Below the pieces are notes generated by a model. It searched no databases and was not told the DNA's origin. It saw only the letters and a program-made list of their open reading frames with translations. A DNA stretch of 63,889 nt, filler included, from Octopus bimaculoides (lineage: Eukaryota): the NCBI RefSeq assembly GCF_001194135.2. It is 3 parts of 3 records of this genome, joined end to end, with 100 filler letters (N's around TTAATTAATTAA, not from the genome) between each part and the next. Parts side by side here need not be neighbours in the genome. Positions count along the whole stretch, not along the records: positions 29,442 to 61,436 come from NC_069002.1; 2 more parts are not named here. One strand, written 5' to 3'. This document shows positions 9,301 to 58,040 of the stretch, piece after piece. The position numbers were made by a program, and so were the translations under genes. Each line of letters begins with the position of its first letter. Positions within the stretch are counted from its first letter, which is position 1.

Positions 9301-11739
9301 CAATTTCAACATCAATGTGAACTCCATAGCAAAGTCCACCGCCAAGAAGATGTACGAGAGAATATTTCATTAACGTATGAGTTCCTAGTTTTCCCATGCA
9401 TCATCCCGTGATGCACCTGGATACAACATTAGTGATATTTCCCTGTTGCCATTCAGTGGGTCTGTTCTTTCAACATATGGCAACTTCACGAAGGTGACCC
9501 AGCCGGAGCTGATCGAGCNNNNNNNNNNCATATGGCAACTTCACGAAGGTGACCCAGCCAGGGCTGATCGAGCCACAACATGCGTCCAGTTAGCATTTTC
9601 CCTGTCAGCACTTTCCCTTCCAGGGTTCGCTCCACCTGATCAATAGCCACATTTAGGCAATCTCCGCTGCTACACAGTCAGCCACATGACCATCAGCTAC
9701 TCTCCCTTCTGATTTTGAGCACGCTATAACCCTCTGATAACCGACTGCGTCTCACGTCGATGTGTTTCCATCTCATTTTCCACCCATTGCCTTCGCACAC
9801 TTCCTCATGTTAACACACCTTTCCCTCCCTCACTCTCTTCTAATATTAAAGTACACTGCATGGCATTATTGAGTTTTCTACTAAAATGCTACTCATAGAG
9901 AGTAGTTTGTTCTACATAAAATACGTTTAGCATTTCTTTAGATCATGATTTGAGATTCGGTGATAGAATTGACAAGAAATGTATCTGTTGATCCACCGTA
10001 TGCAGTTCTACCTTTTATCAGTCTAAATACAAGAGAAGTGATATCGTTTTGCACGATAAGGAGAAAAAATATACGTGACAGCTACAGATATTTGATAATG
10101 CCATATAGAAGTTAAATGTTGAAGCGAAGGAAATAGGATTGTTACATCGCATGGAATGAGTAATAACATATGAGGGGACTGTTTATAATATCAAGCTTAG
10201 ATTTCTTTTGTAGCCAGTTGATTATGGTCTAGCTGACATACTTTCAAGTCATTCCACTTGTGACCATTCCATCATATTTCTATGGACGGAACCTAAGTGT
10301 CGATGACATTATCATTGATATTATTTAATAATTGAATGTGTTTTCATTTCCAAAGAGAGTATGGTGTAACATGAATGCGATACAGTGGATATTTCTAGTG
10401 AGTTATCTCCAAGAAGTTCCATTTTAGATGCAAACCTTAAGGTATAAGTTATAGCCATCTTCGCTGAAGACAGCAGAAGGAATACTGGAATTGAATATTG
10501 TAGTTCTTATTAATTCCACTGTTATTTATTTCCTTAAGTTTATTAAAACATACACACACACTCAATTTTACATAACGAGTGAAATAGTATGATAACATTT
10601 ATTTAACCATTGGATATTCTTAAATCACAATTGTTTCGCAACTAAAGACATGTAGAGATAATTTATTGCATTATATTGTAGCATATATTCTGTATATTTT
10701 GTTATATGATGCAGTAAAGAGCTTTCTTTTTGCGTAGCATTGGATTAGTTGAATCTATATATGCATGTGTATATGTGTGTGTGAGTGTGTGAGAGAGAGA
10801 ATTTGTGAGTATGTATGTGTGCGTGTGTTTGTGTATGTGTGTTTGTATGTATGTGTAAAAACGTGGCATATACCATGACATATATATGACATGATTTTTT
10901 GTTTTTATTGATAATTTATATCAATCAAATTCACATGCAATGAAACGCTTGCCAATGATAGCGTGCAGGCATAGGAGACCAAAATTAATGGGGATGCTTA
11001 GAAAAAGAGAACTCTACCACACATCGAATTCGCTTATAATATTATGTAAGAAAATGTAAATTTAATTCATCTGAAATAAATGCAAATATTCAGATTTATT
11101 CTATTAGTCACGTTTTTGTGTGATTAGCGTACATTCAATTGCATCGAAGAGTTTACTTTTGAAAATAACATACCACTTTTAGACGTTTACTAGCGACATG
11201 CAAACAAATAAATACTAATCGTGTTTTCAATATTTGTCGATAATAATATTAACGAGGTAAATATAGATAACATAAATTTACTGCCAAAGAATATTCTAGA
11301 ATTCCTTTTTTACGTTATTTCCGTGGAAAATAATTCCTATCACACTACCAAAAATAGGAAATAATATTCATTTTCCTTTTTAAGAAATTGCAGCGAAATA
11401 TTGAAAATTATTACTCCAAAGCTATAAATATTTCAGTGAATATAAAATGTTATAATGAAGACGATAATTGTCAGAAATATATTTTCTTCTCTTAAGTTTT
11501 ATCGTATTTTATATTCCGTTTTCGTATTTATTTCATCTGAATTAAAACATATTACAAAAAGTATCAAACAGTATTGAATTCGAACCTCAGTCATCTTCGT
11601 TTGACAGTCAATTTTTTTTTTTCTCGTTTATATCCTTCGAAGTACTTTTAGTAAATTATAATTTTATAGTTACACTTTAACGAAAACAACCCACCTTTCG
11701 TTTCATTTTACGCTTTCGTGATGATTTATATCATTCAAA

Positions 11740-31455: not shown

Positions 31456-31723
31456 ACAGCTGTTATCTTAATTATACAACAATGAATGTTATTGATGGAG
31501 TTGAAAGCATAATGAGAACTCTGCCAACACTGGATTCATACACATCAACATATTTCACCTTTCCAGACTCTCAAACATCATCACAACAACAACAACAGCA
31601 ACAACAACAACAACAACAACAGCAACAACACTTGCAACAATAGTAACAACAAATATTACAATTATAAACTGCTGTGATATACTACACTAATATATTCTTG
31701 TACTGCAATTATATCAGTCAAAG
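31456..31723 (+). other. Putative 5' leader exon of the UCP gene (contains the uORF)
   Basis: Acceptor ttttaatttcag|A at 31455/31456 and consensus donor AAG|gtaagg at 31723/31724. The next acceptor ttttgcttttcag at 32099 leads into the exon holding the UCP ATG. No transcript evidence available. Confidence 0.7.
31482..31643 (+). CDS. Upstream ORF, 53 aa, polyglutamine: MNVIDGVESIMRTLPTLDSYTSTYFTFPDSQTSS-Q15-HLQQ*
   Basis: Translated by hand. ATG has A at -3; 15 consecutive Gln codons (13 CAA, 2 CAG); tandem stops TAG TAA. Below the 60-aa cutoff of the ORF track. Confidence 0.55.
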   Translation: MNVIDGVESIMRTLPTLDSYTSTYFTFPDSQTSSQQQQQQQQQQQQQQQHLQQ

Positions 31724-32223
31724 GTAAGGAGAACAACTTATATCTAAGTCATTATGTTTCTCTGTATATATTCCACTGTTACATTTCTTTAATTTTTCAC
31801 ATTTTCCTTTTCCTTTCTTTTCTTTTCACGTTCTTGTTCTTGTTCTTCCAAATTGTGTCTCTTATGATATATATATATATATATATATATATACCAGTAC
31901 TGACTGTTGTTTATCTCCTGGTCAGCTTTGACGAAACATAATGTTACTAGGTTCAAATCTCGTCAGAGTGCATGTTGCTATTTTACAATGCATGATACCA
32001 TTTACACTTAAATTTTATAATTTAATTACTTACTAATTAACTAACATGATTAAATATATAATTATTTATATATATATATATAATATTTTTGCTTTTCAGA
32101 TTCACTACGTACATATCTTTCCATTCCAGTAACAAGAATCTAAATTTAATTAATTAATTATCAAATACAAGACAACTGTGATTTTAATTTTTATATATAT
32201 TTGCTGCATTTCACGAAGTCAAA

Positions 32224-32352
32224 ATGGTTTCAAGAACATCGCCAAATGTCTTAGAACCGTCTCTAACGGTGAAATTCTTTGGAGCTGGTACAGCTGCTTG
32301 TATTGCTGATTGTGTGACATTTCCACTGGACACAGCCAAAGTCAGGCTACAA
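32224..32352 (+). CDS. UCP2: UCP coding exon 1 (MVSRTSPN...AKVRLQ)
   Basis: ATG 32224; donor CAA|gtgagt; exon probably starts at 32100. Confidence 0.95.
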
Positions 32353-33045
32353 GTGAGTGTCTGTTTTCCCAATATTCTGATGAGCTTTATAACCTCGATT
32401 GATTTATTTTTGTTAATTAAATGTAATCACCATAATTGCTACTAACATTACCATCACCATTACTTTTATTATTGCCACCACCACCTCCACCACCGTCACT
32501 ATCACAACTACCGCTACCACCATCATCGTTATACACTACCATCAATGTCGTCATCATTCTCATCACCGTCATCACCACTATTTCCATTACCGCCGCTGCC
32601 ACCGCCACCACCACCACCACCACTACCATCACCATCATCATCATCATCTGTAGTAGCACTGAAAACTGCATCAAATTCCAGATTTTACCAGAACAGAAAA
32701 ATTTAACACAAAATTCTTCATATTTATTTTCAAAGATTCAAGGAGAAACTGGAAACAAAACCAGCAAACTCGGAGTATCGCCAACGACAGAGAAACAGGC
32801 ATTCAAATATAAAGGACCAATTGGCACAATCAGAGTGATTATTCAAGAAGAAGGTGCACGTGCTCTTTATAATGGCATCATTCCAGGTTTGCAACGACAA
32901 ATGTGTTTTGCATCTATTAGAATTGGTTCCTATGACAGTTTTAAAGACTTTTATAGTCGTCTTTATGGAAACAGTAAGTCTTATATTTATCTTTTACTTG
33001 TTTCAGAAATTTCTGGCCTAATATCTATATTAGAAAGTATTATTA

Positions 33046-33092
<47 letters not shown>

Positions 33093-34778
33093 GAAAGCAA
33101 CAAGCTGGCAGAATTGTTAGCATGCCCTGTGAAATGCTTAGTGGTATTTCGTCTGTTTTCACATTCTGAGTTCAAATTCTGCTGAGGTCAACTTTGCCTT
33201 TCATCCTTTCAGGGTTGATAAATCAAGTACAGCCGAGCACTGGGGTCAATGTAATCGACTATCCCCCTCCCCCAAATTTCAGGTCTTGCGCTTATAATAG
33301 AAAAGATTATTATAACTATTAAGTTGAGAAAATTAAGTACCAGACAATTACTGACTAGATGTGATTGACCAACCCACTTTCCCCTAAAAAACTGCCAGCC
33401 TTGTGCAAAAATTTGAAACCATTGTTATTGTTGTTGTTGTTGTTTCCCAAATGCTAACCTATATTTTCTTCCTTCATCTAGATCCCCAAAAGCAACCATC
33501 ATTTATTGCCAAAATGTCAGCTGGAGTGACCTCTGGTGCGATCGCCATCATGATTGCCCAGCCCACCGATGTTGTCAAAGTGCGTATGCAAGCACAAAAA
33601 GCTGGTGTACCAGCTCGTTACTCAGGCACAATGAATGCATATAAAACTATTGCCACCACGGAGGGTGTCCGAGGTTTATGGAAAGGTAACAAAAAAAATG
33701 TCTTTTTAATTGGTCATCTCTAAATTCTAGAAATTTCAAATAAAATTAAAGAAAAAATATTCAATCTTATCATCATCATCGTCATCATCATCATCGTCAT
33801 CATCATCATCGTCATCATCATTTAACTTCCATGGTAAGAGATGAGGAGCAAAGTAAGAGCAGTGAATGGTGAACATAAAAGTGGGTAACAAAATTTTAAT
33901 TTTGTTTTGTTTTTTGTCAGTGAATGTTATTTCCTATTTAGCTTCTATTTAGCCCAGATCTTATCTCCTCCATTCCTTAACTCTTGTATACACATACACA
34001 CATACATGTTCCACCCATGCCAGCATGGAAGGCAGACAGTAAACAATGATGATGATGATGATGATATATATATATATATAGGTATTTAAAGAAAAATTGT
34101 TTTAAATCCAAACAAGTGAATGTGGAGAAGAAATGAAGTTGGGAATGTAGAGTATAGTAAAATTAATTTCAAATTAATCAAATTTTAAAGGAATTAAGTT
34201 TTTTCAGCTACTCTTTTCTATCTTAACTTGGAGGTCCATGTAATGTCTAATATCTTATTTGTCCTTGCTCCATGGGTTTTCTTTCTTTTGCATTCTTTCA
34301 GGAATGGTTCCTAACATTGCCAGGAATGTTGTTATCAACTGCTCAGAGTTGGTCACCTATGACATTGTCAAAAACTTCATCATCACCAGAAATATCCTAT
34401 CAGACAATTTACCCTGTCATTTTGTGTCAGCAATAGGAGCAGGTTTCTGTGCCACTGTAGTGGCATCTCCTGTAGATGTAGTGAAAACCCGTTACATGAA
34501 TTCCAGTTCTGGCCAATATAACGGAGTCTTAAGCTGTTCTTCTCAAATGTTTAAAGAAGGTGGTTTTATTGCATTCTACAAAGGGTGAGTGACATTAATT
34601 CTTTCTGTTCTTCAAATGGTTTCAATCACTGGCCTGTGACCATGCTGGGGCAGTGCATCCAAAAGTTCAGAGTCATACCGACTGCAGTACTTACTTCCTG
34701 CACTTTTTATTGACTACTATTTATTAAATAACTAAATCATCTTTGGATGACTAAAGAGATGCAACTGAATGCACAAGC

Positions 34779-34817
<39 letters not shown>

Positions 34818-35093
34818 NNNNNNNNNNNNNNNNNNNNNNNNNNNNNNNNNNNNNNNNNNNNNNNNNNNNNNNNNNNNNNNNNNNNNNNNNNNNNNNNNNN
34901 NNNNNNNNNNNNNNNNNNNNNNNNNNNNNNNNNNNNNNNNNNNNNNNNNNNNNNNNNNNNNNNNNNNNNNNNNNNNNNNNNNNNNNNNNNNNNNNNNNNN
35001 NNNNNNNNNNNNNNNNNNNNNNNNNNNNNNNNNNNNNNNNNNNNNNNNNNNNNNNNNNNNNNNNNNNNNNNNNNNNNNNNNNNNNNNNNNNNN

Positions 35094-35136
<43 letters not shown>

Positions 35137-35177
35137 TATATATGCATATATGTATGTATATGTATATTTATGTATGT

Positions 35178-35213
<36 letters not shown>

Positions 35214-35365
35214 GCATGTCTGTATGTATATATAAATATCTTTGTTCTCATTTCAGATTTTTTCCTTCTTTCCTGCGACTTGGTTCATGGAATATTGTTA
35301 TGTTCATCTGTTATGAACAAATCAAGAGACTCCTGACCAACAATAGGCAAGTGTTGGCTCATTAG
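32224..35365 (+). CDS. UCP2: Mitochondrial uncoupling protein, UCP2/UCP3-like (SLC25 carrier), spliced CDS, 320 aa
   Basis: join(32224-32352,32736-32973,33482-33685,34302-34584,35257-35365) = 963 nt, all GT-AG, phases 0/1/1/2. Three carrier signatures ([30 protein letters not shown]). Nucleotide-binding Arg residues in GLQRQ, NIARN and SFLRL, plus ELVTYD. N-terminus [15 protein letters not shown] matches vertebrate UCP2/3. Strong Kozak aaaATGg. Exact orthology (UCP1/2/3) needs a tree. Confidence 0.95.
32736..32973 (+). CDS. UCP2: UCP coding exon 2 (IQGETG...RLYGN)
   Basis: Acceptor ttttcaaag, donor A|gtaagt; [14 protein letters not shown] motif. Confidence 0.95.
33093..33310 (+). mobile_element. 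SINE family B copy in UCP intron
   Basis: gttcaaattctgctgaggtcaactttgcctttcatcctttc...taagtacagc matches the other family B copies. Confidence 0.75.
33482..33685 (+). CDS. UCP2: UCP coding exon 3 (PQKQPS...GLWKG)
   Basis: Acceptor cttcatctag, donor G|gtaaca; [12 protein letters not shown]. Confidence 0.95.
34302..34584 (+). CDS. UCP2: UCP coding exon 4 (MVPNIARN...FYKG)
   Basis: Acceptor ttctttcag, donor GG|gtgagt; [10 protein letters not shown] and [13 protein letters not shown]. Confidence 0.95.
35257..35365 (+). CDS. UCP2: UCP coding exon 5 ([12 protein letters not shown]...VLAH*)
   Basis: Acceptor ctcatttcag; stop TAG 35363-35365. Confidence 0.95.
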
Positions 35366-36023
35366 ATATCACCACCACCACCACCACCACCACCATCACC
35401 ACCACTACCACTACCACCACCACTTTATCCAGCTTTCATTGACCTCCCTTACTTTATTATACCACTACGATGACGATGACCACCACCACAACCACAACCA
35501 TCATCATCATCTCCTCCTTCACCACCACCATCTTCATCATCATCATCACCATTAATAACATACTACTGTTTACTTGAATCGGTCAATGCCTCTTCTTACT
35601 TCCATTGTCTTCTCCTTTGTATATTCTGACCAAGAGAAGAAAAGAAGAAATGAAAAAATAGAAATAAAATATTTAAAAAAAAAATCAAAAATTAAAAATA
35701 AGCAAAAGCTGTTTTGTGTCCTTTGAAGAACTATTTACCCAAATGCAAAGATGAGGATTTAGCAAACATTGTTGTCTAAGAATCGATTTGAAAGTTTCAT
35801 CCAAAGGAACAGTTTTCAGTAACACATTAATACTAACTATCACTCCTCCTCCTCCTTCTCTTCCTATTACTGCTACTGACACTCTTGTATTTATATTTAA
35901 AAAAATTTATTTTATACTACGATTGGTTGAACACACAAATCAATTGGTTCATTGAATTTCTGACATTGAGAAACACAGACAGAGATAGAGAGGGAGACAA
36001 TTTACATATTTTGCCTGCATACA

Positions 36024-36107
<84 letters not shown>

Positions 36108-39100
36108 CATACATGTGTATGTACATACATGCATGTACACCTGCATCCATCTTGGGCTTGCAAGCAAGTTTCTGTCTCTCAAATTCCTCTAACAAGGCAC
36201 TGATCAAATCAAGGCCAAACTTCATGACACCAACCCAGAGTGCCAGAGGCTAAGCACTGGAATCGAACCCTGAATCCTTCTGGTTGCGAAATGAACTTCT
36301 TGACAACGCAGTCATGTATGGTTGTTGCTAACCCTTCTACTAATACAATGAGAGAATGCCGGTGAAGTCCCTTTGCTCTCAAAACAGTATTTCCTCACTT
36401 GAACTGGAGAAAACAAACGACACACTTGTGGCATATAATAAAATTTCTTTGCTGTTGTTGCTGTTGTTGTTTAACCCCAGGTCATCTCTGACTAAAGTAG
36501 TCCAGTCATGATCACTTTGTCATTTTGTACAGAGAGGATTACATGGTCCTTTGTTTGTTTTTTATTGGATGGTAGGGTGTGATTTGAGAGAGATGTAGCT
36601 ATTATTTCTTGTAGGCTGAGGTATTTGTTGTTGTTTAGCTCAGATCAGCTCTATTTGATCAACAGATCTATGATTCATAGTCATTCTAGTTGTGACCATC
36701 CCACCATAATCTTAGATATAGTGTACCCAAGATCACAATCCAATGTGCCCTTCCTTTTTTTTAAGAAGACAAATTTGCTTTTCAAAACTTTCACCATCTC
36801 AAATGAAGAATGTATCTACATGGAAGATATAATCAGAAAGATGGTTTGTTAACGAAGCAGTTTGTAGTTGCACAGCCATCAAATCAACCCTCAATACAGC
36901 AGACCCATGCACAACAATGTTCCAGCCATGACCAGCCCATCTATTTTCAGACACATTTCTCTTATGTAAGACTCTGTTATCCCATTTATCATTTATGATA
37001 AGTGTTGATTTGAGGGACATTTGGCTGCTGTTTTTTCTAACAGATCAAGCAATCCACACATAGATTATGCAGTGACCATAAAAGAGGTTCTGTCCTTTGG
37101 ATTCTTGATTCTAAACATTACTCTGTTGATATGCAGAGATACATACACATACACATAAACCATAGTTTAGTTTGTTCAAACTAAACATTTACTATGTGAA
37201 TCCCACTTATCTGTGATCACTTGAAGCAATTTTGGCCCCAAACTCTTGGACATTCCTCCTCCTCCTCCTGTTCTTCTTACCAATGTATATGCAAACCAAA
37301 ATCCATATGCTAACTGGTTTAACACAATTGCCTGGTCCTTATGGAGCATTTAGCAGAGTTCACATGGTATCAAGTCTCTGACCCAGAAGAACCCCCAACC
37401 CACCCATCTTGCCAAGCCTGGTCCCCCATTGAAACTACATGTTTTTTACTATTTCTAATTTATATCCATTTTCCCTGTAGATGTCTAAGCAGTACCTCAC
37501 CCTCAGCTCTAGAAGACACCCGCATAACTCATATGAGCATTACCTCTCTACCCCTTTCCAACACCTGCCCTTTGTCAAATGTGTTTAAATCATTCACACA
37601 CACAGACACGTGCACACATATATAAACTTACACATGCACATACACACATATATTCATACAGAGACATGGCAACACAAAACATACAAACTTACAGACACAC
37701 AAACATACATTCTAAAGCAGAAGCATGCATTGGGTGCAGCAAAAATACTCCCCAGATTCACCATTCTTGGTAAACAGTTCAATAAAAAACACAAGATATG
37801 TGTAAAGCTAAACCACAATTGATAATTAGTAAAAGATGGTAAGACATTAGCTACATGAAAACATCATTATTAATTATCTACCTTCAGTAGTGCAACTTCA
37901 GTGGGTATTTAAAATATGGGAGGTGTTTATGCTGTGCATCATCTACAATCACAAGTATATAGCATAATTATAAAACTACATTCGCTTTCTATCTGTTTGT
38001 CTGTCTGTCTCCCTCTCTCTCTCTCTCTCCCACCACACACATATTTGAACAGAAAGAAAGCTCCCTCAAAATATGTAAGGGAAGGAAAATGACTTAATGG
38101 AACCTATTTTTTCTGTCTTGCTGAAGAACCCTTTACTGGTATCATGTGATTCCTTTACCTGATTCTCTACCCTCTGTTTATGCTGGAACCAACTCCTCTC
38201 TTGCTACAACCTCTCTCCTTACTCTCCATGTTTCCTTATCTCCTGTCTGAATACATTTCTCTCATGTGAAATATGTTCTGTACCTCTAATCACACAGGAT
38301 GTTTGGAAAACACTCCAGCCAAGCATAGCTATGACTGCGACGACAACAACAACAACAATAGCAAAGTCAACTGCACTGTAATATTCGAGGCTTTACTACA
38401 ACCATGTGATGATGACAACAACTGCAAGCATGATGACGAAATGATAATAATAATAATAATAATAATAATGAAGATGATTTCTTTTATTGCCTGTGAGCGT
38501 TCAAGATATTGGGGACCATACAATGCAAATGAGAATGATAAATGTCGAGGAATTTACATTGATTAAAAGACTGAGAACAACAATGGTAATTAATTAAAAG
38601 AAAAGAGCAATAGCTAACAATGTAACGCAACAATATAACAAGGAACTGTGGGATATGTGGAGTAAACAGGTGAGGTCAATGATGACGAGAGCAATAATTA
38701 ACAATACCAGACAATAATGATGAAAACATATCCTAAAGTAATAATTAATAAGACATGAAATCAATAACGATGAAAAGACATTATCACTGGATGATGAATT
38801 TCTGCCATTGATTTTAGAGTGTGAATGCCCTGTTGTTCAATTGACTGGACAATTTACTCATTGAATTAGTGAACAACATAACTGTGTATTCCACAGACAT
38901 GCATGCCGTTTATATAATTCTCAGACATGATCAGTGTGATGCAAATATGATAAGGTTAGGCCTTTGGACTGCTGGTACACTCAACCAGAAGGACTTCTCT
39001 GTGGTTTCTGCTCACTGAAATTACACTCACAAAGCCTGGAATGACCCAAGGCTGTAGTAAAAACATTTGGTCAAGATGCCACAATGTGGGATTGAACTCA

Positions 39101-42087: not shown

Positions 42088-42123
42088 TCAGACAACCTTA
42101 ATGCTGTCGTTTTGGTGTCGTAT
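42088..42123 (-). CDS. NADSYN1: NADSYN1 probable last coding exon ([11 protein letters not shown])
   Basis: Acceptor ttttcttttcaag, phase 0, TGA at 42090-42088. Gives 705 aa, close to the 706-aa human protein. The residues are not conserved, so this exon is less certain. Confidence 0.7.
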   Translation of the reverse strand: MRHQNDSIKVV

Positions 42124-45100
42124 CTTGAAAAGAAAATAACATTTAGATAATTTTAGACAGAATCAATTGACAATTTATCAAGTAATTAGCATGAAAAAAC
42201 GTCATAAGGGAAAAATTTATTAATTATTTCCTATAAATATATTTATTTATATTAAAGGCATTACTATACATAAATGCCTCATGCTAGGAGGGACTCTTAA
42301 AGTTAAAACTACCATAATAAATACATAATACTGAATGCGAGGAAATGCCAGTCCATCGCAGCTTTAGTCAAGAAACAGGAAGCAAGGGTGAAGACTATAA
42401 AACAATAATTACAATAGACGTAAATACAAAAGAAATAAAAAGAAAATAACATACCATCTTGACGGCGTCGTCAATTTTTTGGAACTGCCAGTTCCACTTG
42501 ACATTGTAGAGGAAAGGACGGAGATCAAAGCGATTGTCATCAGGAGAGTAGCTCTCAGCATGGTAGGATGGTGTCAACACCGTCATTTTGTGACGATTTA
42601 TTGAATACGAACGGAAAAAGTGTTTCACCTTGTCGGACACCTAGAAATGAGTTAGGGGAAAATAAAATTTTTTTTTAATTGGCCAAAAGACACAAATATG
42701 TAAACGGTGATGGCGACGCCAGCTGGTGACGACAGTCATGGTGATAGTGGTGATGATTATAATGATGGTGGTGCTGATGATGATGGGGACGATGACGGTG
42801 GCAGTAACATCAAACAATGAGAATGAAGTCAACAATGATGATGGAGATGTTGGATAATGATGAAAGTGATAAGAATGAAGATTGGCATGATGACAATGAT
42901 ACTGATGATGATGATGATGCTAGCAACAGAGTCCAATGGAATAAGTGCTAAGCTTAAAAAAACCTAAGTCCTGGAGTCGATCCATTCAACTAAAAGTTCT
43001 TCAAAGCAGTGCCCCAGCATGACCACAGTATACGAATTGAAATAAGTGAAAGATGAAAGATAAAGATGAGCCCAAAATGCTTTTGATGAAGTGGGTCTGC
43101 TGAATCAGGGGACAACATTGGTGTAAAAGACTACTTACTACTTCAGGAAAGCTTTCCCCAAATTCCTCACCAGACCATATCGACATCAGCTTCACAAACA
43201 TATTGTAAGGTCCACATCTCTGCTTTTTGCGAAGATTTCCAAATATTGACAGCTCCTGGTATGTCATTCCCATGTCCTCCTGGAGGAAATACAAACAGAA
43301 TGTCATTTTCATTGCTGCTGCATATGTTGTTGCTGTTGCAGTTATTATTGTTACATCACTTTGCTTTTCACCCTTTCGGGATTGATAAAATAAGTACCAG
43401 TGGAGTACTGGGGTCAATCTAATTGAAACTAATGTGTCTAGATACTTTACATGAAGATGGAGGAAAAAAAAAAAAATTAAATTAATCACAGAAAAATAAT
43501 TAAGAACCAGAATGAAAAAAAAAAAAAAAAAACAATTATTGGATGTAAGATCAAACAAAAGTGAAACAGGATGCTTGTCACTTCACCTCATCAGTTTGTG
43601 CCACTTTGCCATCTTCCAGTGGCTCTAATTCAGCCGTAGCAGGAGCATCAGCAATTCTGAAAGATAGACAAACATGTCACTAATGTATTCATGTAGCATT
43701 TTCATGTAGTGATTCATGGAATAATTCATATAATGCCTTCAATGAGTGTCTTCCTGTCGTTGTTCATGTAGTAATTTCATGTAGCAATCTTTATAGTGTA
43801 TTCATGCAATGATTTAGTGTAGCAATCTTTATAGTGTATTCATGTAGTGATTTCATGTAGCAATCTTTATAGTGTATTCATGCAGTGATCTAAACAGTGC
43901 CAGTGGAAGCACGTGGCTCAGTGGTTAGGGCATTCAGCTCATGATAGTAAAGCTGTGAGTTCAATTTCTGGTAGTGTGTTGTGACCTTGAGCAAGACACT
44001 TTATTTCACGTCGCTCCAGTCCACTCAGCTGGCAAAAATGAGTTGTACCTGTAATTCGAAAGGGGCCAGCCTTGTCACATTCTGTCTCACACTGAATCAC
44101 CTTTGGAACTATGGTAAAGGGTACATGTGTCTGTGGAGTACTCAGCCTCTTGTTGTTGGTATTGTTTGTGTTTGATGGAATACATGTTGAATGGAGTATC
44201 AATATGGAAAGAATGGTCTAACTTACTTCTTGAGAGAGAGCAGTTGGATATGAGACATATAGTATTCTACAAACTTCCTGAGATCCGTCTTATTGATTCC
44301 ACCGATGGGGTTAATGTCAGCACTGGAGCAGTCATATTTTGTCATGTAGCCACGGAGACTGGAAATGGGAAAAATGCATCATTAACGAAACTAGCAAGCG
44401 AGTAGAATTGTTAGCACGCCAAACAAAATGCTGAGCAGTATGTCACTTGTCTTTAAGTTCCAAGTGTAAATTCTTCAAATTCCACTGAGGCCAACTTAGC
44501 CTTTCATCTATTTGGAGGTTGATTAAATAATCCACCGTTGTTCTGATAAAGATGATTGAATTTGAAGAATGACATTTTAGAAGAGGGAAATTCGAAATTT
44601 ACCTTTCATCTATGTTTGCTGAACCAAGGACAAGGAGAGTTCCAGGTTTACCCCGTGCCCAGAGAGTCAGTTGGGCAAATAAATATGCTAGTACCATCCT
44701 GATCCGAGCCTGATTTCAAAAGATTGAAAAGGGTTTGTAATTAGCAGGACAAAGATAATTAAAGAAAGAAGAAATGAAATGTTTTAATGAACACTCAACA
44801 TGTTGAGTTTTCACTAAAACATTTCTTCTAACTCTGTTTCCCAGCCTATTTTCCTACAGTCTCTGCAATAAGTTTCTAAAAAAATGTATGTTCCACCATT
44901 GGTTGGAAAAACGTATATGTGTAGTGTGTTTGCTGTGGAAAAAAAAAAAAATTCCATAATTTCATGTCCCACTAAAAACAAAAAACAAAAAATTTTGGAT
45001 CCCACGCCCTACCAAAATCTTCTCAGGCCCCACCAGTGGAGCATATGGCCAACATTGGGAATCACTGGTTTACCATGTTGAATAAATAGTTAATATGATG

Positions 45101-46556
45101 AACTGATGGTCAATATGTTGAATTAATGGTGAACATGGAATAAGATGACTGGTTAGCATATTGAGTTAATGGTTACATGTTAACCATTAAAAGTGAACGG
45201 GATGAATTAATTGTTAACATGTTGAGTTCTTGGTAAATGTGAATATGATGAATGGTTAACATGTTGAATAAAATAGCCGAGTAGTTCTGAGTTCAATTCC
45301 AGAGTGCAGCACCTTAAGCAAGTGTCTTCTATGATAGCTCAGGTTGACTAACGATGACGGTGATAGTCAAACTTCAGAACAAACCAAGGAAATTACCGTA
45401 TTTTAACATGTATAAGGAACTCACTAATTTTTTGGGTTTAAAATTTGGAAAAAAAGGTTTTGTAAGGGATTATAATACTATCCATGTATTAGAAACTCCT
45501 ATATTATTTTAACCTAATTTTTGACAAAAAAAGGCCCCTTATACACGTTAAAATGCAGTATGTTTTTAGTGATCAGTCACAAGTCCTGTCTAATGTACCA
45601 ACAGCTGGAGTGAATTGAAAACCATGAAGTTAGGAAGGAAACTTCTCAACCTCACAGCCACATCTAGACCCCATTGCATTTTAAACTCTTTAACCATTTT
45701 AACAATTCTCTTATCCCTTGCCTGTTTTTTCATCCTTAACCCTTGATAGCTCTTAATTATTTTTTTATCAATTTTCATCCTTTGAAACAATTTTTGTCCC
45801 TTATATCCCCAAGGTTTAGTTTCTGTGCCTTACCTGAACATTCTGTAAGGCCTGGTTTTCCCGATAAGTCCCACCAAACTTTCTAAACTTAGGCGTGACC
45901 GACATGGTTGCTATGAACACAACCAGAATCGTGTCCACAATAGTCTGGATGCTGATTTCCAGGTGGTAACTGAAAAATACCAATATTACAAAAGACAAGA
46001 AACCAAAAATACATGACTGACAATAACAGAATATTTTCCATTAAATGGTCGAGGGGACTATCACCAGATAGACTGGTTGAATGAAGATCTCACATCAAAT
46101 GATAACAGCATATCACATATCAAGCCATCATCATCTTCATCATCATTTAATGTCCGTTTTCCATGCTGGCATGAGTTGGATGGTCTGACCAGAGCGGGAA
46201 TGGCCAGGGGCTGCACCAGGTTCCATAGCCTGGTTTTGGCTAGGTTTCAACAGCTGAATGCCCTTCCAAATGCCAGCTACTTTACAGAGTGTATAGGGTG
46301 CTATTTACATGCCCCCCCCCCCCCGCCTCACAAGTGCTTTTTAGGTGGCACCAGTGCTTTTATATATTATATATTATTGTGTCTGGGGAGAGTCATTCTG
46401 TTTTAATGCCTTATTAATTAACACACTCACTGGTTCGATTTCCACTCATTCACTTCTTTGATTTTTTTCCTAAAATTTTCATTGCTTCTTACAACCTCTT
46501 CAATATATGCTTCAACACACGAATTCACATAAAGTATCTTGCAAACTAAATACAAA

Positions 46557-46587
<31 letters not shown>

Positions 46588-49500
46588 GCTGAGACAAATT
46601 TTCTACAGCCGGATGCTCTTCCTGTCACCAACCCTTGCTTTGCAAGTTTTTAAAGCAACATAATGCTCTCCCCTACTTTGAACATGTTTGCACAGCAGAT
46701 TGTAAACTGATGAGAGAGATTTAGCTTCTAGTTTTAGCAGGTGAAGCGACCACATAGAAGTTTCCTGAATGCCTCAGGGAACCAAGCTGATTGCAATACA
46801 AGGATTAACGCCTAAAATATGTGTGTATGTTTGCATACATTTGTGTGCGTGTGTGTCTAAATGTATGTGTTTGCTTGTAGGCACTGACCTTCCAATTTGA
46901 CCCGCAAGATCTGAGGCTCTCTGTTGAGTCTCAGTTGAGCTGTTTGATGATCCCATGTAGCATGTGGTAAGCAACTGATTCGCAAGTGCTTCCGGTGTGT
47001 CTGGTATCTGGTCAGAATTCAAAATCCTCTTCAGATCTTCAATAACAGTAGCATCTGCAAAAAGAAAAAAATTGAGAGATTAGCACTTCTTTATGGAGCT
47101 TTCAATATTATATATATAGGCGCAGGAATGGCTGAGTGGTAAGTAGCTTGCTTACCAACCACATGGTTTGGGTTTAGTCCCACTGCATGGCACATTAGGC
47201 AAGTTTCTTTTACTATAGCCTCGAGGCCAACCAAAGCCTTGTGAGTGGATTTGGTAGATGGAAACTAAAAGAAGCTGTGTATGTGTGTGTGTGTTGGTAT
47301 GTTTATGTCCTCGTAACTTAGTGGTTCGGCAAAAGAGACCGATAGAATAAGTACTAGGCTTACAAAGAATAAGTCCAGGGGTTGATTTGTTCGACTAAAG
47401 GCGATGCTCCAGCATGGCCACAGTCAAATAACTGAAACAAATAAAAGAATAAAAATGTAATGTCTCCATTAATGAATTAAAAATTCGTTGGAAACAGGTG
47501 TCGTGAATTGACACATCAACCATCAGTTGTTATTTATTCATAAAAATATAAAAATATATATGTACGTATACAACAGCTTCCTTTCAGTTTCCATCTATCA
47601 AATCCACTTTTTGAGGCTTTGGTTTGTCTGCGGTCGTAGTTGAAGTCACTTTCCTCCAAGATACCAAGCAGTGGGACTAAACTCAAAACTGACTGACACA
47701 AATCAGCATAGAAGAAAGGACATTAAATCGATGATGATGTATATGTGTACGTGCCTGCGTACACCACAGTCTAATACAATGTGGCTGTCCCAGTTAAGTA
47801 GCTCTGAGGTCTTTTGTTGACAATGCTTGTGGAAAATAAATGTTGATTTTGAAAGTTGCAATACACATAAAACCCCGGACATTGTAGTTAACAATACATA
47901 CCTTTATTGACGACTGCTTCATGCACCAAACGACACATTGAGTGTACTATACAGGCCACACTCGAACTGTCTATTCCTCCACTCAGGGGCAAGAAGAATC
48001 CATTCATTCCAGAACGTCTCAGATAGTCCCAGAGCCAACAGGCTGGACCCAAGCTGGATTAGAAATCAAATGAAGATAAAAAAAAAACCCAAAAAGGTAA
48101 TAATCAGATTTCTGAAAAAGAAAGGAAATAACTGCTGGAATGTGTACCAGATTTAAAATAAGTATTGCGGCTGATTTATTTTATTAAACTTTGCAAGTAG
48201 GTACATGTTGGGAATCACTGATTATGCAAGCAAAGAAATTTCTCAGAGATTTGGTCATGAAAAGACCAGAAATCAGCAAACGGAGAAAAAGGGGCAAATG
48301 ATTTATGAGGCTCACCTTATTTCTTCTTCAGGTGTGTGATACTGCCATTCTATTGGCTCATTTGTCTTGGCAAACATGTTAGTGGAGAATGAAATAGGGA
48401 GTTGAACCTGGGGAAAGCTTTCATGGTTTGTAGCCTGTTGACAAAGCAAACAATAGAAGACAATAAAATGAAAGACAACAAATGACTCTACAGTTCTATA
48501 TTTAAGAGATGAGGAATTATAATAATAATAATAATGAAATTATTGTATACAGTGCTCAGGTGTATTACAACTTGTCAGAAGTGCGTATAAAGCATATGCA
48601 GTAATGTACAAATGTCTGGAAAGTGAACAGTGCATGAGTCAGATCCATGCTTGCGTGTGTATGGAAGGAAGAAAATCAGGTGTAGTGTTGGTGAATCTCA
48701 TGAAGCATGGAAGTTTTGAAGGATGCAGTCCTCCGACAACTAACAACTGACGCCGGCAGATTGTTCCATACTTCAGCAACTCTTAGCATGAAAAAGTGTT
48801 TCCAAAAGTCATAGGAGCTGTGCTGTTTTCTGACTTTGTAAACATGTCCACGGGTGCCACCACCTTCATCATTGAAAATATATTAAAATACAGTCATTAA
48901 AATAATTTTATAAAAGTGATAACTTAGGACTTACTGTTAAGCAGAAACTTTTAGTCTGATTCCGGTAACTGACAACATCATCCAGGTCTACTGTGGCCAC
49001 GAGAACCACCTGCAAGTAAAAAAAAACAAAACAATGATGATTGGCTAACAAATGGAGCCTAATATATAGTCACCAAAATAACAGCCAATTCTCCCTCAAA
49101 TCACACCATCTTGGGAAAGAACATGTCTTTGTGTCTACGTTTGTTCCCCAACCCTACCATCACTGCATGCCGACCGGTGTTGATGTGTTTATGTCCCCGT
49201 AACTTAGTACATCAACAAAAGAAACTCATAGAATAAGTACTGTGGGCGATTTGTTTGGCTACAATTCTTCAAATGCGGTGACTGAAAGAAAGATAAAAAA
49301 AATTAAAATAAAAAAAAATAAGAGGAAAAGAGAGAATAAGGTAATAACAAAACTTACAACATCTTTGACAGAAAACTGTGGACCCTGGACAAGGGTCTTA
49401 CCATTCATAGTAACTGAGGAACACCCATCAAAGTAGAGTCGGTCACCATCACAGCCAAGAAAATTTGAGTAGACATACACACCACCACCCTGTAAAGGAA

Positions 49501-54663: not shown

Positions 54664-56493
54664 GTCTNNNNNNNNNNNNNNNNNNNNNNNNNNNNNNNNN
54701 NNNNNNNNNNNNNNNNNNNNNNNNNNNNNNNNNNNNNNNNNNNNNNNNNNNNNNNNNNNNNNNNNNNNNNNNNNNNNNNNNNNNNNNNNNNNNNNNNNNN
54801 NNNNNNNNNNNNNNNNNNNNNNNNNNNNNNNNNNNNNNNNNNNNNNNNNNNNNNNNNNNNNNNNNNNNNNNNNNNNNNNNNNNNNNNNNNNNNNNNNNNN
54901 NNNNNNNNNNNNNNNNNNNNNNNNNNNNNNNNNNNNNNNNNNNNNNNNNNNNNNNNNNNNNNNNNNNNNNNNNNNNNNNNNNNNNNNNNNNNNNNNNNNN
55001 NNNNNNNNNNNNNNNNNNNNNNNNNNNNNNNNNNNNNNNNNNNNNNNNNNNNNNNNNNNNNNNNNNNNNTTTGGTCGGCCCGAGGCTATAGTAGAAGACA
55101 CTGGCCCATGGTGCCACGCAGTGGAACTGAACCCGAGAAGCGTGGTGAAGTGGAAGTAGGTAGATCTGAAAGGGAATTGCGAACGGAGTTCAGGGTAGAA
55201 TAAGATGAAAAGGGAACAACGGAAATCGAGGCACTCTTTATGGATTCTGAACCTGGTTGATACATCACCCAAATCTCCCTTATATCACAGCCCTGTTTTT
55301 TTCCTTTTTTTAAACTGATCAAGTATACCCAAATGTACAAAATGTGGTACCCAGGTTTGACTCATCTTTAATTCTGGATTTCCTCAATCAAACTTGTCAT
55401 CGTTCTGAACAAACTATTCAATTATGAAATGAAAAGTTATCTTCCCCTTGTAGTGAGATCTTGATATTTAGCAATTGCATAATTAAAAGTAAAATTTGAA
55501 AACAGATATTGTTGTATTTCGAGGACGGGGTCATTTTTCAAGTATTTTCATTTATATATTCGGACTTGGCGAGTTTATTACTTTTCTAATTTTAACTCAT
55601 GTCCATTGTCCGGAAATCTTTCGTCAGTGACACTTTCCGCCCTCGTATGTGCTCCTGCTCCGCTTAATCACGAATTTAGGGAACACTAAACGTCGGTATT
55701 GAATATGATACGAATGAATTGCTGAAATAAATTTTTTCTCTTAGCTGGAGAAATAAAAAACAAACAATAAAAAGCTCCCCGCAACAACCCCGAAAAAGAC
55801 GAAAAAGTAAAACTAGAGAACTGGAAGAAAAAAAAAAAAAAAAAAAAAAAAGAAAGAAAGAAAAAGCGGCTATGCAGTTCTTCCTGATATACCAAATTAC
55901 TAGTCGGTCACGTCTGGAACGTTTATAATTGTCAGTGTTGTTCAGTGAAAACTTGTTAGCAATGAATTGCAGAGAGGAAGCGAGGTAACTCTTTATTACA
56001 AGATAATTTATCGGTAACAGTGACAGTAAACATAAACAATATGAGAGACCACTAAGTGGATCCCTTGTATGCTAAAAATAAACGTCAAACCGTCTTACCA
56101 CTAAATCTGTGATCTCAAGTTAGCAAGACGCTAGATGTTTACGAGCTAGACAAATGAAAAGAAACAAACATATCTTTCTTTCTCTCATTCTTTGTTTATT
56201 CCTTTCTTCCTTTCCTTCTTTCTTTCTTTACTATGTATATTTAGGGATTAATACGCCAAAAATAGTAGTTGGTGTTAAACTTCTAATTTATAGTTTGCAT
56301 CCGTCACATAGAATTAATGACCTCTACGGCTTACCATAACGTTGATTGGACATCCTGTTAGCCGGGCTCTGTTGACACAGGGTACTTATAGACGTATTCG
56401 GCTGGATTTACTCACTTCCTTTTTCCACACACATACAGATATAGATATACAGATACACGCACACACACATGTATATATACATACATACATAAT

Positions 56494-56544
<51 letters not shown>

Positions 56545-56664
56545 NNNNNNNNNNNNNNNNNNNNNNNNNNNNNNNNNNNNNNNNNNNNNNNNNNNNNNNN
56601 NNNNNNNNNNNNNNNNNNNNNNNNGGGGACAAACACAGAATATATATTACATATATATATTCTG

Positions 56665-57621: not shown

Positions 57622-58040
57622 GTGACGATGATGATGATGATGATGATGATAATGGTGATGATGATGACGACGACGGCGATGATGATGATGTTATTGTTGT
57701 TGTTAGTGATGATGATGGTGACGATGACAACGACGATTACGATGAAGATGATGATGAGGATGAGGCTGATGTTGATGTTGCTGCTGCTGCTGATGATGAA
57801 GACGACGATGACGACGATGAAAACGATGACGACGATGATGATAATGATGAAGACAATAACGATAATTTTGATGATGATGGAGAGGAAGAGAAGGGGGAGG
57901 AGTAGGAGAAGGAGGAAGAGAGGGGGAAGGGGAGAAGGAGGATGATGATGACCATGATATCGATGATGATGGTGTTGGCGATGACAACTATAACGACGAC
58001 ACGGATGATGGTGATGATGATGATGTTGGTGTCGTTATTG
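57622..58040. repeat. Compound trinucleotide microsatellite (GAT/GAC/GTT/GAG mosaic)
   Basis: Direct reading. Similar mosaics at 13230-13525, 22330-22530, 32420-32650, 53465-53870 and 59880-60115 produce spurious ORFs. Confidence 0.9.

What the first reader, a model, noticed from the sequence alone, without database searches (positions are those of the whole stretch)
31456..31723. Polyglutamine uORF in a spliced leader exon of the UCP gene: candidate glutamine-sensing translational switch
Seen: an exon with strong splice sites (ttttaatttcag / AAG|gtaagg) upstream of the UCP start exon holds a 53-codon ORF (31482-31643) with good Kozak context. It has a non-repetitive 34-aa N-terminus, 15 consecutive Gln codons, 18 Gln in total, and tandem TAG TAA stops. 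The two CAG interruptions are synonymous only in the Gln frame. A short overlapping uORF (31486, MLLMELKA*) gives four upstream AUGs in all; no AUG lies in the remaining 204 nt before the UCP start. Known: mammalian UCP2 has a uORF in non-coding exon 2 that represses translation, glutamine raises UCP2 translation through this leader, and UCP2 supports glutamine oxidation; amino-acid-run leader peptides are classic tRNA-charging sensors. Inference: octopus may keep the same exon/uORF design with an explicit Gln-codon sensor, in which ribosome speed on the CAA run sets scanning, reinitiation or NMD (the stop is 80 nt upstream of a junction). Caveat: (CAA)n arrays are common in this genome.
Basis: partly seen in the sequence, partly recalled or inferred. 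Interest (0 to 1): 0.85.

Follow-up and report, generated by a model that had tools for sequence, protein, structure and literature searches.

The report
Conserved polyglutamine uORF exon before octopus UCP
A small non-coding exon ahead of the octopus uncoupling-protein gene carries a short upstream reading frame ending in a glutamine run; the exon and its reading frame are kept in other octopods, so it is probably an ordinary translational brake, and nothing yet shows that it senses glutamine.

Summary
The window is Octopus bimaculoides chromosome CM046622.1.

I found no octopus transcript, so inclusion of the exon in UCP mRNA rests on comparison with other species:
- The exon and both splice sites are present in O. 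vulgaris, O. sinensis and Argonauta hians.
- It is better conserved than its introns (96.6% against 90.4%).
- Part of it is the only non-coding block that aligns between Octopus and Argonauta.
- In Argonauta an AUG sits at the same exon position. It opens a 104-codon frame that reads a CAA run as Gln, although the peptide has diverged beyond recognition.
- UCP mRNAs from three decapod species and a scallop-like bivalve also carry 31-41-codon uORFs, none rich in Gln.

Against a glutamine sensor:
- The run varies in length and has Leu interruptions.
- The O. sinensis assembly has a frameshift inside it.
- Decapods lack it.
- Trinucleotide repeats are dense in this region.

Verdict: a real, conserved leader exon with a probably repressive uORF, which makes it a new member of a known kind. 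The CAA run is most simply an old in-frame microsatellite. The glutamine-sensor idea is plausible but untested (about 0.1).

The parts
31456..31723 (+). Internal non-coding leader exon (268 nt) of the UCP2/3-like gene, with acceptor ttttaatttcag| and donor AAG|gtaagg
   Evidence: Sequence. Orthologous exons with the same splice sites occur in O. sinensis (L003:7076-7344), O. vulgaris (L004:8185-8457) and Argonauta (L002:8254-8783). Exon identity is 96.6% against 90.4% for flanking introns, Fisher p=0.002. It is single-copy in the sequence held.
31482..31643 (+). uORF of 53 codons plus TAG (context acaacaATGa). A second in-frame AUG lies at 31512.
   Evidence: It is kept in frame in O. vulgaris (53 codons). 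In O. sinensis it is frameshifted inside the run (64 codons). In Argonauta an AUG at exon nt 28 opens 104 codons that end ...[15 protein letters not shown].
31486..31512 (+). Short overlapping +1-frame uORF MLLMELKA*. Its TAA overlaps the in-frame AUG at 31512 (TAATG).
   Evidence: Its first AUG is lost in O. vulgaris and O. sinensis; only MELKA/MGLKA from 31495 remains.
31584..31628 (+). Run of 15 Gln codons (13 CAA, 2 CAG), the core of a (CAA)n microsatellite extending to 31652
   Evidence: An orthologous array is present in all three Octopus species and in Argonauta, with variable length and interruptions (CTA, CTT, CAC).
31641..31646 (+). Tandem stops TAG TAA ending the uORF
   Evidence: The motif CAC-[CT]TG-CAA-CAA-TAG-TAA is shared by the three Octopus species. 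Argonauta stops 8 codons earlier in the orthologous alignment through a TAA.
31663..31694 (+). Conserved element downstream of the uORF, including the invariant 19-mer TATAAACTGCTGTGATATA (31663-31681). Function unknown.
   Evidence: 87.5% identity over 32 nt to Argonauta L002:8635-8665, E=9e-6, excluding the repeat. It is part of the only non-CDS collinear block between the two genera. No convincing conserved structure.
32100..32223 (+). Leader part of the next exon (acceptor ttttgcttttcag|), free of AUGs, leading to the UCP start codon
   Evidence: It is 95-96% identical in O. vulgaris and O. sinensis.
32224..35365 (+). UCP2/3-like CDS in five exons (32224-32352, 32736-32973, 33482-33685, 34302-34584, 35257-35365), 320 aa
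   Evidence: tblastn and splice-site assembly. It is 99% identical to O. bimaculoides 'mitochondrial uncoupling protein 2' and 59-61% to vertebrate UCP2/3, with Pfam Mito_carr.

Best explanation
Positions 31456-31723 are a genuine internal 5'-leader exon of the octopus UCP2/3-like gene. The exon has been conserved across octopods and carries a translatable uORF.

Inferred mechanism: scanning ribosomes meet AUG 31482 (A at -3), or the in-frame AUG 31512, and translate 53 or 43 codons through the CAA run. They terminate at TAG/TAA, 204 nt before the UCP AUG. UCP synthesis then depends on leaky scanning past the upstream AUGs, or on reinitiation after a fairly long uORF, so the exon acts as a constitutive brake on UCP translation. 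If the uORF is translated, its stop lies 80 nt before an exon junction and might also expose the mRNA to nonsense-mediated decay.

Selection appears to act on having an open frame of this kind, not on the peptide. The CAA run is most simply an old microsatellite sitting inside that frame. It is tolerated because slippage by whole repeat units keeps the frame and because no frame of (CAA)n contains a stop.

Shown here: the sequence anatomy, the conservation of the exon, splice sites, AUG position and open frame, and the recurrence of uORFs in other molluscan UCP mRNAs. Inferred: inclusion of the exon in UCP mRNA, translation of the uORF, and repression of UCP.
For: - Identity: the window matches O. 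bimaculoides CM046622.1 at 100%, and the downstream gene is UCP2-like.
- Exon and splice sites are conserved in O. vulgaris, O. sinensis and Argonauta hians. In Argonauta the flanking introns cannot be aligned, yet the acceptor (tttttttttcag|AAAACTG) and donor (ATCAAAG|gtaaga) are in place.
- The exon is 96.6% identical between O. bimaculoides and O. vulgaris, against 90.4% for introns (p=0.002). That matches the 95-96% of the first coding exon.
- Across the 26-kb locus, the only collinear Octopus-Argonauta blocks are the five CDS exons (74-80%) and the leader block 31578-31694 (80.7%).
- In Argonauta the uORF frame has no stop in the 112 codons from the exon start to the uORF's own stop. The other two frames have four stops each. 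The expectation from base composition is about 6 stops, P(none) about 0.002. For the non-repetitive first 45 codons alone P is 0.09.
- The peptide itself is not recognisably conserved (p=0.12).
- The Argonauta genome annotation places a CDS end exactly at this uORF stop (L002:8592) in a model reaching further upstream. That fits a transcript containing the exon.
- A SINE-like insertion of 416 nt lies 64 nt upstream of the exon in O. sinensis, with an insertion of similar size at the same site in O. vulgaris. This argues for intron rather than core promoter directly upstream.
- Decapod UCP transcripts (L005-L008) share a 31-33-codon uORF with conserved start and stop and an in-frame 6-nt indel. 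67% of its columns are invariant, against 38% downstream.
- A scallop-like UCP mRNA has a single 41-codon uORF in a strong context.
Against: - No octopus transcript, junction read or ribosome footprint could be obtained. The peptide is absent from 5.8 billion predicted proteins, although uORFs are rarely called as genes.
- The O. vulgaris annotation has an 88-aa model ending in exon 2, in a frame that cannot pass through this exon. Some transcripts may therefore skip it.
- About half of animal mRNAs have upstream AUGs (own knowledge), so recurrence of uORFs is only weak evidence of function.
- The persistence of the CAA run and the adjacent 32-nt element since the Octopus-Argonauta split is more than a purely neutral microsatellite would predict. 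Something beyond 'any uORF' may be conserved.
- The leader has no significant RNA structure (z=+1.0), so structure adds no support.
Confidence: 0.55

Rival explanations
1. The Gln run is a sensor of glutamine or tRNA-Gln charging. When charged tRNA-Gln is scarce, ribosomes stall on the 15 Gln codons and block scanning or trigger decay. When glutamine is plentiful they clear the uORF and UCP is made.
For: - The Gln frame of the run is kept in O. bimaculoides, O. vulgaris and Argonauta. The array has persisted at this site since their split.
- Both good-context AUGs (31482, 31512) lead into the run.
- In mammals, tRNA-Gln is the tRNA that selectively loses charging under amino-acid shortage, and polyQ proteins are then selectively depleted (PMC7744096).
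- Mammalian UCP2 translation is stimulated by glutamine through its uORF (PMC6071544).
- The predicted direction of the effect matches.
Against: - The O. sinensis assembly has a 4-nt deficit inside the run, which turns it into poly-Asn.
- Run length is 15, 9+6, 3 and 9+2, with Leu and His interruptions.
- The decapod and scallop-like uORFs are not enriched in Gln (1-2 of 31-33 residues and 4 of 41).
- Frame retention is the default for slippage by whole triplets, and no frame of (CAA)n contains a stop.
- A CAA/CAG array elsewhere in the Argonauta uORF is read as Asn/Ser.
- Trinucleotide arrays are dense in this region.
- No functional data exist.
Confidence: 0.1
2. An incidental feature. The exon is a real leader exon, but the uORF and CAA run have no regulatory role. 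The frame is open only because the repeats lack stops and the species are related.
For: - The three Octopus species are too close (95-99% identity) to test coding constraint.
- The peptide is not conserved to Argonauta (p=0.12).
- Microsatellites are abundant.
- Upstream AUGs are common in animal mRNAs (own knowledge).
Against: - In Argonauta the non-repetitive part of the exon has diverged almost to randomness, yet it keeps an AUG at the same exon position and an uninterrupted frame. The other two frames carry four stops each.
- The exon is as conserved as coding sequence.
- uORFs recur in every molluscan UCP leader sampled.
Confidence: 0.17
3. A promoter reading. The conserved block, with TATAAA at 31663-31668, is a core promoter. 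Transcription would start about 30 nt downstream, inside the 'exon'. The main mRNA would then begin near 31695, use the donor at 31723 and lack the uORF, possibly alongside a longer upstream-promoter isoform.
For: - The best-conserved non-repeat sequence between Octopus and Argonauta begins with TATAAA.
- RefSeq lists several mRNAs encoding the same UCP protein in O. bimaculoides and O. sinensis, which suggests alternative UTRs.
- The O. vulgaris 88-aa model shows that some transcripts do not pass through this exon in frame.
Against: - A strong acceptor is conserved at the 5' end of the exon in both genera, and an ORF is maintained upstream of the TATAAA. Neither has a use if that part is not transcribed and spliced.
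- The Argonauta annotation puts a CDS through this region.
- TATAAA is frequent in AT-rich DNA.
Confidence: 0.1
4. RNA-level or separate-gene readings. Either the CAA run works as an unstructured, CAA-rich leader element that promotes scanning, like the poly(CAA) part of the TMV Omega leader. Or the exon belongs to a separate upstream gene or non-coding RNA rather than to UCP.
For: - The spliced leader is less structured than shuffled controls (z=+1.0).
- The Argonauta and O. vulgaris annotations call separate small genes upstream of UCP on the same strand.
Against: - The conserved donor at the exon end requires a downstream acceptor, and the next one is the UCP start exon.
- An enhancer role does not explain the conserved AUG and open frame.
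- Neither the O. bimaculoides nor the Argonauta ORF found any homologue.
Confidence: 0.08

Closest known systems
Mammalian UCP2 leader uORF (36 codons in non-coding exon 2; glutamine-stimulated translation; Hurtaud et al. 2006, 2007, as summarised in PMC6071544)
   Same: The main ORF is a UCP2/3-type carrier. A non-coding exon upstream of the start-codon exon holds a uORF of tens of codons. A long AUG-free stretch follows.
   Different: - No sequence relationship to the mammalian uORF was tested or is expected.
- The mammalian uORF is not known to me to contain a Gln run (own knowledge).
- Repression and glutamine response are shown in mammals and untested here.
PolyQ-tract translation as a read-out of tRNA-Gln charging (Pavlova et al. 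2020, PMC7744096)
   Same: A run of 15 consecutive Gln codons that ribosomes would have to decode.
   Different: That work concerns polyQ tracts in main ORFs of mammalian proteins, not a uORF gating a downstream cistron. Nothing comparable has been measured in molluscs.
Bacterial leader-peptide attenuators (trpL, hisL, leuL)
   Same: A short leader ORF with a run of codons for one amino acid, placed upstream of a gene linked to that amino acid's metabolism.
   Different: Those depend on coupled transcription and translation and on alternative terminator and antiterminator hairpins. This is a spliced nuclear mRNA leader with no significant structure.
Conserved-peptide uORFs (fungal arginine attenuator peptide, AMD1 MAGDIS, plant and dipteran CPuORFs; PMC2276209)
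   Same: An upstream ORF kept over long evolutionary time ahead of a metabolic gene.
   Different: In those the peptide sequence is conserved and acts inside the ribosome. Here the peptide is not detectably conserved between genera, and the decapod uORF shows no excess of third-position changes.
Repeat-containing leaders that are translated (FMR1 CGG repeat, FMRpolyG; PMC5263258)
   Same: A trinucleotide microsatellite in a 5' leader that is read as a homopolymeric peptide.
   Different: FMRpolyG starts at a near-cognate codon and is known mainly for pathology on expansion. Here there is a canonical AUG and a short, stable run.

Membership tests
uORF-mediated translational control (generic) | AUG in usable context upstream of the main AUG, with an in-frame stop before or overlapping the main ORF | tested here: met
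   AUG 31482 (A at -3), stop at 31641-31643, main AUG at 32224.
uORF-mediated translational control (generic) | The uORF lies in the mature mRNA of the regulated gene | not testable with these tools
   No octopus transcript could be retrieved. The support is indirect: splice sites conserved to Argonauta, and an Argonauta CDS model ending at the uORF stop.
uORF-mediated translational control (generic) | Start codon and open frame conserved across species | tested here: met
   O. vulgaris has 53 codons in frame. Argonauta has an AUG at exon nt 28 and 104 codons, with no stop in the frame against four in each other frame. The O. sinensis AUG is kept but the frame shifts inside the run.
uORF-mediated translational control (generic) | Ribosome occupancy and repression of the main ORF | not testable with these tools
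   This needs Ribo-seq and reporter assays.
Mammalian UCP2-type leader | The main ORF is a UCP2/3 orthologue | tested here: met
   320-aa Mito_carr protein, 99% identical to O. bimaculoides UCP2 and 59-61% to vertebrate UCP2/3.
Mammalian UCP2-type leader | uORF in a separate non-coding exon upstream of the start-codon exon | tested here: inconclusive
   Met by sequence and by conserved splice sites. Not confirmed by transcripts.
Mammalian UCP2-type leader | Sequence homology of the uORF to the vertebrate one | not tested
   No vertebrate leader sequence was on hand. Even within molluscs, homology between the octopod, decapod and scallop-like uORFs is not significant.
Mammalian UCP2-type leader | Glutamine relieves the repression | not testable with these tools
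   An experimental question.
Amino-acid-run leader-peptide attenuator (bacterial type) | Run of codons for the regulatory amino acid in a short leader ORF | tested here: met
   15 consecutive Gln codons, 18 of 53 in total.
Amino-acid-run leader-peptide attenuator (bacterial type) | Alternative RNA hairpins (terminator and antiterminator) coupled to the position of the ribosome | tested here: not met
   The spliced leader folds no better than shuffled sequence (z=+1.0). There is no convincing conserved hairpin and no Rfam match. It is a eukaryotic spliced gene.
Conserved-peptide uORF | Amino-acid sequence conserved under purifying selection between distant taxa | tested here: not met
   Octopus against Argonauta N-terminus p=0.12. 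Against decapods p=0.015-0.45. The scallop-like uORF against Octopus gives p=0.027 uncorrected, and against the other sequences p=0.07-0.69. Variable columns in the decapod uORF are 9/10/9 by codon position.
PolyQ tract as tRNA-Gln sensor | Gln reading frame and run kept by selection | tested here: inconclusive
   In frame in 3 of 4 octopods and frameshifted in the O. sinensis assembly. Length and purity vary. Absent from decapods.

The most novel reading that the evidence does not exclude
Octopods may have turned the ancestral UCP leader uORF into an explicit polyglutamine decoding gate. UCP translation would then be coupled to charged tRNA-Gln through ribosome speed on a CAA run held in frame since the Octopus-Argonauta split. 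The conserved 32-nt element just after the stop might set the outcome of termination, whether reinitiation or decay. This would be a eukaryotic, codon-run-based amino-acid sensor in a uORF, and a mechanistic clue to the unexplained glutamine effect on UCP2.
Probability: 0.1. Interest if true: 0.8.

Novelty: new member of a known kind. Interest (0 to 1): 0.45.

Why it matters
If the exon is in UCP mRNA and the uORF is translated, control of UCP2/3-type carriers by a leader uORF is not peculiar to mammals. It would recur in cephalopods and at least one bivalve, which points to long-standing pressure to keep UCP synthesis low and inducible.

The octopod version is unusual because a Gln run has sat in frame inside the uORF for a long time. 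That gives a clean natural construct for asking whether decoding of a homopolymeric codon run in a uORF can tie a downstream cistron to the supply of an amino acid. The question is directly testable with reporters. It also bears on how glutamine relieves the mammalian UCP2 uORF; no mechanism for that effect is known to me (own knowledge).

If the run is only a tolerated microsatellite, the finding is an ordinary conserved uORF.

Tried and rejected
- **Transcript evidence from the uORF.** An exact look-up of the 53-aa peptide among called genes found nothing. A homology search with its non-repetitive part found no candidates in 5.8 billion proteins. uORFs are rarely called as genes, so this says little.
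- **Retrieving the Argonauta 145-aa model** by searching with its last-exon translation gave no hit at E<=1.
- **Metagenome and metatranscriptome scan** for the conserved 19-mer gave 11 hits. All have unrelated flanks, so they are chance matches.
- **Full-length Octopus UCP in RNA-seq assemblies.** Only genome records carry it.
- **Homology between octopod and decapod leaders.** There is no significant nucleotide match (E>=0.4). Peptide similarities such as FTFPDSQTS/FSFRCSNTS and DGVES/FVES are not robust.
- **The scallop-like uORF.** Its similarity to the Octopus N-terminus (GV..TLP..D.Y) has p=0.027 before correction for several comparisons. A 31-nt nucleotide match has E=0.027. I treat both as unproven.
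- **RNA structure.** There is no Rfam family and no stable or covarying fold.
- **Repeat-family origin of the exon.** No other copies occur in the sequence held.
- **Antisense coding.** The minus strand gives only a 23-codon poly-Leu ORF.
- **A longer protein entering from an upstream exon.** The frame is open to the exon's 5' end in both genera, but in different phases (2 nt before the first full codon in Octopus, 0 in Argonauta). An upstream extension is therefore not conserved.

Full report
**What is in the window**

The piece matches Octopus bimaculoides chromosome CM046622.1 (assembly GCA_001194135.2) at 100%. Every sequence statement in the finding holds:
- An exon-like segment at 31456-31723 is flanked by ttttaatttcag| and AAG|gtaagg.
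- A 53-codon ORF at 31482-31643 encodes MNVIDGVESIMRTLPTLDSYTSTYFTFPDSQTSS, then Q15, then HLQQ.
- The run is 13 CAA and 2 CAG, and tandem TAG TAA stops follow.
- There are four upstream AUGs (31482, 31486, 31495, 31512).
- No AUG occurs in the remaining 204 nt of spliced leader.
- The uORF stop lies 80 nt before the exon end.

Downstream is a compact five-exon UCP2/3-like gene with its start at 32224. The exons are 32224-32352, 32736-32973, 33482-33685, 34302-34584 and 35257-35365. The product is 99% identical to the annotated O. bimaculoides 'mitochondrial uncoupling protein 2' and 59-61% identical to vertebrate UCP2/3.

**Is the exon real?**

I could not obtain any octopus transcript. The uORF peptide is not among called genes and has no homologue among 5.8 billion predicted proteins. 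A metagenome scan for a conserved 19-mer gave only chance hits. The case is therefore comparative.

I fetched the orthologous loci of O. sinensis (L003), O. vulgaris (L004) and Argonauta hians (L002) through their UCP proteins.
- In the two congeners the exon, both splice sites and the next exon's acceptor are intact.
- The exon is 96.6% identical to O. bimaculoides, against 90.4% for the flanking introns (Fisher p=0.002). That is as conserved as the first coding exon.
- In Argonauta the introns cannot be aligned. Even so, a 530-nt exon sits in the same place, with a strong acceptor (tttttttttcag|AAAACTG) and a near-identical donor (ATCAAAG|gtaaga).
- Across 26 kb, the only collinear Octopus-Argonauta matches are the five coding exons (74-80%) and the leader block 31578-31694 (80.7%).
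- The non-repeat part of that block is significant on its own: 32 nt at 87.5%, E=9e-6, including the invariant TATAAACTGCTGTGATATA.
- The exon is single-copy in the sequence I hold.
- In O. sinensis a SINE-like 416-nt insertion lies 64 nt upstream of the exon, and O. vulgaris has an insertion of similar size at the same site. That fits an intron rather than a promoter at that spot.
- The Argonauta annotation ends a CDS exactly at the uORF stop, in a model that reaches further upstream. That is what an ORF caller would do with a transcript containing this exon.

I put the probability that this is a true spliced leader exon of UCP at about 0.8.

**Is the reading frame maintained?**

- O. vulgaris keeps a 53-codon uORF in the Gln frame (Q9-L-Q6-HLQQ*).
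- The O. sinensis assembly has a 4-nt deficit inside the run. This shifts the frame to poly-Asn and moves the stop to the TGA inside the conserved 19-mer, giving 64 codons. I cannot tell whether this is a real allele or a long-read assembly error.
- Argonauta has an AUG at exon nucleotide 28 (Octopus: 27) that opens 104 codons ending ...[15 protein letters not shown]. That frame has no stop over the 112 codons from the exon start to the uORF's own stop. The other two frames have four stops each. The expectation from composition is about six, P(none) about 0.002, or 0.09 for the non-repetitive first 45 codons alone.
- The N-terminal peptide itself is not recognisably conserved between the genera (p=0.12). 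The 5' exon nucleotides align only marginally (p=0.08).

An open frame kept while its sequence drifts is what one expects of a uORF whose translation matters and whose peptide does not.

**Other molluscs**

Logan and JGI transcript contigs for decapod UCP, from three species, all carry a 31-33-codon uORF about 190 nt upstream of the start. An example is MSNQRSHNLTFSFRCSNTSPCKDHFVESLSN*.
- Its start, stop and frame are conserved, including an in-frame 6-nt indel.
- 67% of its columns are invariant, against 38% in the rest of the leader.
- Variable sites are spread 9/10/9 over the three codon positions, so the constraint is not on the peptide.
- Two contigs of one species differ at their 5' ends, which suggests alternative first exons.

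A scallop-like UCP mRNA has a single 41-codon uORF in a strong context. An unidentified invertebrate has uORFs of 1 and 20 codons. None of these is rich in Gln.

I could not show homology between the octopod, decapod and bivalve uORFs. The recurrence may therefore be either ancestral or convergent.

**The glutamine run**

Trinucleotide microsatellites are very dense here, with about 20 arrays in 32 kb, several of them CAA-type. This one is the longest CAA array in about 130 kb examined, and the only one shared between Octopus and Argonauta.

Its interruptions are partly synonymous (CAG). They also include CTA and CTT (Leu) and CAC (His). Earlier in the Argonauta uORF a CAA/CAG array is read as Asn/Ser. 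The 'synonymous only in the Gln frame' argument is therefore weak.

Slippage by whole units preserves the frame, and no frame of (CAA)n contains a stop, so frame retention is close to the default. CAA is simply the usual Gln codon of this gene (13 of 15 in the CDS).

The mammalian UCP2 leader has a 36-codon uORF, glutamine stimulates UCP2 translation, and the uORF is required (PMC6071544 citing Hurtaud 2006 and 2007). Mammalian polyQ translation is selectively sensitive to tRNA-Gln charging (PMC7744096). The sensor idea is thus mechanistically plausible and predicts the right direction of effect. Nothing here tests it, and the comparative data are mixed.

**Mechanism I consider most likely (confidence 0.55)**

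This is a conserved internal leader exon whose uORF captures most scanning ribosomes at AUG 31482, or at the in-frame AUG 31512. UCP synthesis then depends on leaky scanning, or on reinitiation across the 204-nt AUG-free spacer. Nonsense-mediated decay is a possible added effect. The CAA run is an old microsatellite tolerated in frame.

Rivals:
- a glutamine or tRNA-Gln sensor (0.10);
- an incidental ORF with no role (0.17);
- a TATA-type internal promoter that would leave the uORF out of the main mRNA (0.10);
- an RNA-level CAA enhancer, or a separate upstream gene (0.08).

The leader has no significant structure (z=+1.0) and no Rfam match. It is therefore not a bacterial-type attenuator. Peptide conservation fails, so it is not a conserved-peptide uORF.

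**Verdict**

I classify it as a new member of a known kind, uORF control of a UCP2/3-type gene, with an unusual and testable feature in the conserved in-frame Gln run and the conserved 32-nt element after the stop. Interest 0.45.

Noticed in passing
window 31663-31694 (19-mer at 31663-31681); L002:8635-8665: A 32-nt element about 20 nt after the uORF stops is the best-conserved non-repeat, non-coding sequence between Octopus and Argonauta in the whole locus. It begins with TATAAA. In Argonauta it contains a mini-ORF (MYKLL*). In O. sinensis the frameshifted uORF stops at the TGA inside it. Its function is unknown; it could be a promoter element, a protein-binding site or a termination context.
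   Followed up: partly
L005:176-277, L006:142-243, L007:22-117, L008:13-108: Decapod UCP mRNAs share a conserved 31-33-codon uORF about 190 nt upstream of the start codon. Start, stop and frame are kept, but there is no excess of third-position changes. L005 and L006 have different 5' ends, which suggests alternative first exons.
   Followed up: partly
L020:100-225: A scallop-like UCP transcript has a single 41-codon uORF in a strong context (aacagaATGg) 205 nt upstream of the start. It is preceded by CAACAACAG. Its N-terminus (MVNGVLTLPYCDNY) faintly resembles the Octopus uORF (GV..TLP..D.Y), with p=0.027 before multiple-test correction.
   Followed up: partly
L004:1-9905 (stop TAA at 9903-9905, about window 32130-32132): The O. 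vulgaris annotation has an 88-aa gene on the same strand ending inside the UCP start exon, 96 nt before the UCP AUG. Its frame cannot pass through the uORF exon. Some transcripts probably join a far-upstream exon (more than 10 kb away) directly to this exon and skip the uORF exon.
   Followed up: partly
L002:1-8592: The Argonauta hians annotation has a 145-aa gene whose CDS ends exactly at the polyQ uORF stop and starts beyond the fetched locus. It is probably a leader ORF called as a gene.
   Followed up: partly
window 35344-38328: The RefSeq 324-aa UCP model (ending ...NNRMFGKHSSQA) uses a GC-AG intron, with donor AG|GCAAGT near 35345 and acceptor cacacag|G at about 38298. The 320-aa form ending QVLAH reads straight on to 35365. 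It matches the Argonauta and decapod C-termini (QVLVH) and O. sinensis isoform X2, so it looks like the ancestral end.
   Followed up: partly
L003:6605-7020, with an insertion of similar size at L004:7712-8128; absent at window 31392/31393: A 416-nt insertion with a tRNA-like SINE head lies 64 nt upstream of the leader exon in O. sinensis. O. vulgaris has an insertion of similar size at the same site, whose sequence I did not read. O. bimaculoides has none.
   Followed up: no
window 31724-32099, against L004:8458-9872 and L003:7345-9876: The intron between the uORF exon and the start exon is 376 nt in O. bimaculoides but about 1.4 kb in O. vulgaris and about 2.5 kb in O. sinensis. The extra DNA sits at the (AT)n array at 31867-31893, and a short inverted duplicate of 31923-31989 lies nearby.
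   Followed up: no
window 31510-31514: The stop of the short +1-frame uORF (TAA) overlaps the in-frame AUG at 31512 as TAATG. This arrangement can favour termination followed by reinitiation into the polyQ frame.
   Followed up: no
window 29442-61436, for example 35370-35423 and 57623-57879: Trinucleotide microsatellites are very dense, with about 20 arrays in 32 kb. They include (CAC)18 starting 5 nt after the UCP stop codon and a (TGA)n array of about 86 units. Assembly gaps (runs of N) lie at 34818-35093, 54668-55069 and 56545-56624.
   Followed up: no
window about 42088-48328 and beyond, minus strand (L001:19865-26105): The downstream neighbour on the opposite strand is a 705-aa gene with CN_hydrolase and NAD_synthase domains, a glutamine-dependent NAD synthetase type. 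The same neighbour is present in O. sinensis and O. vulgaris.
   Followed up: no
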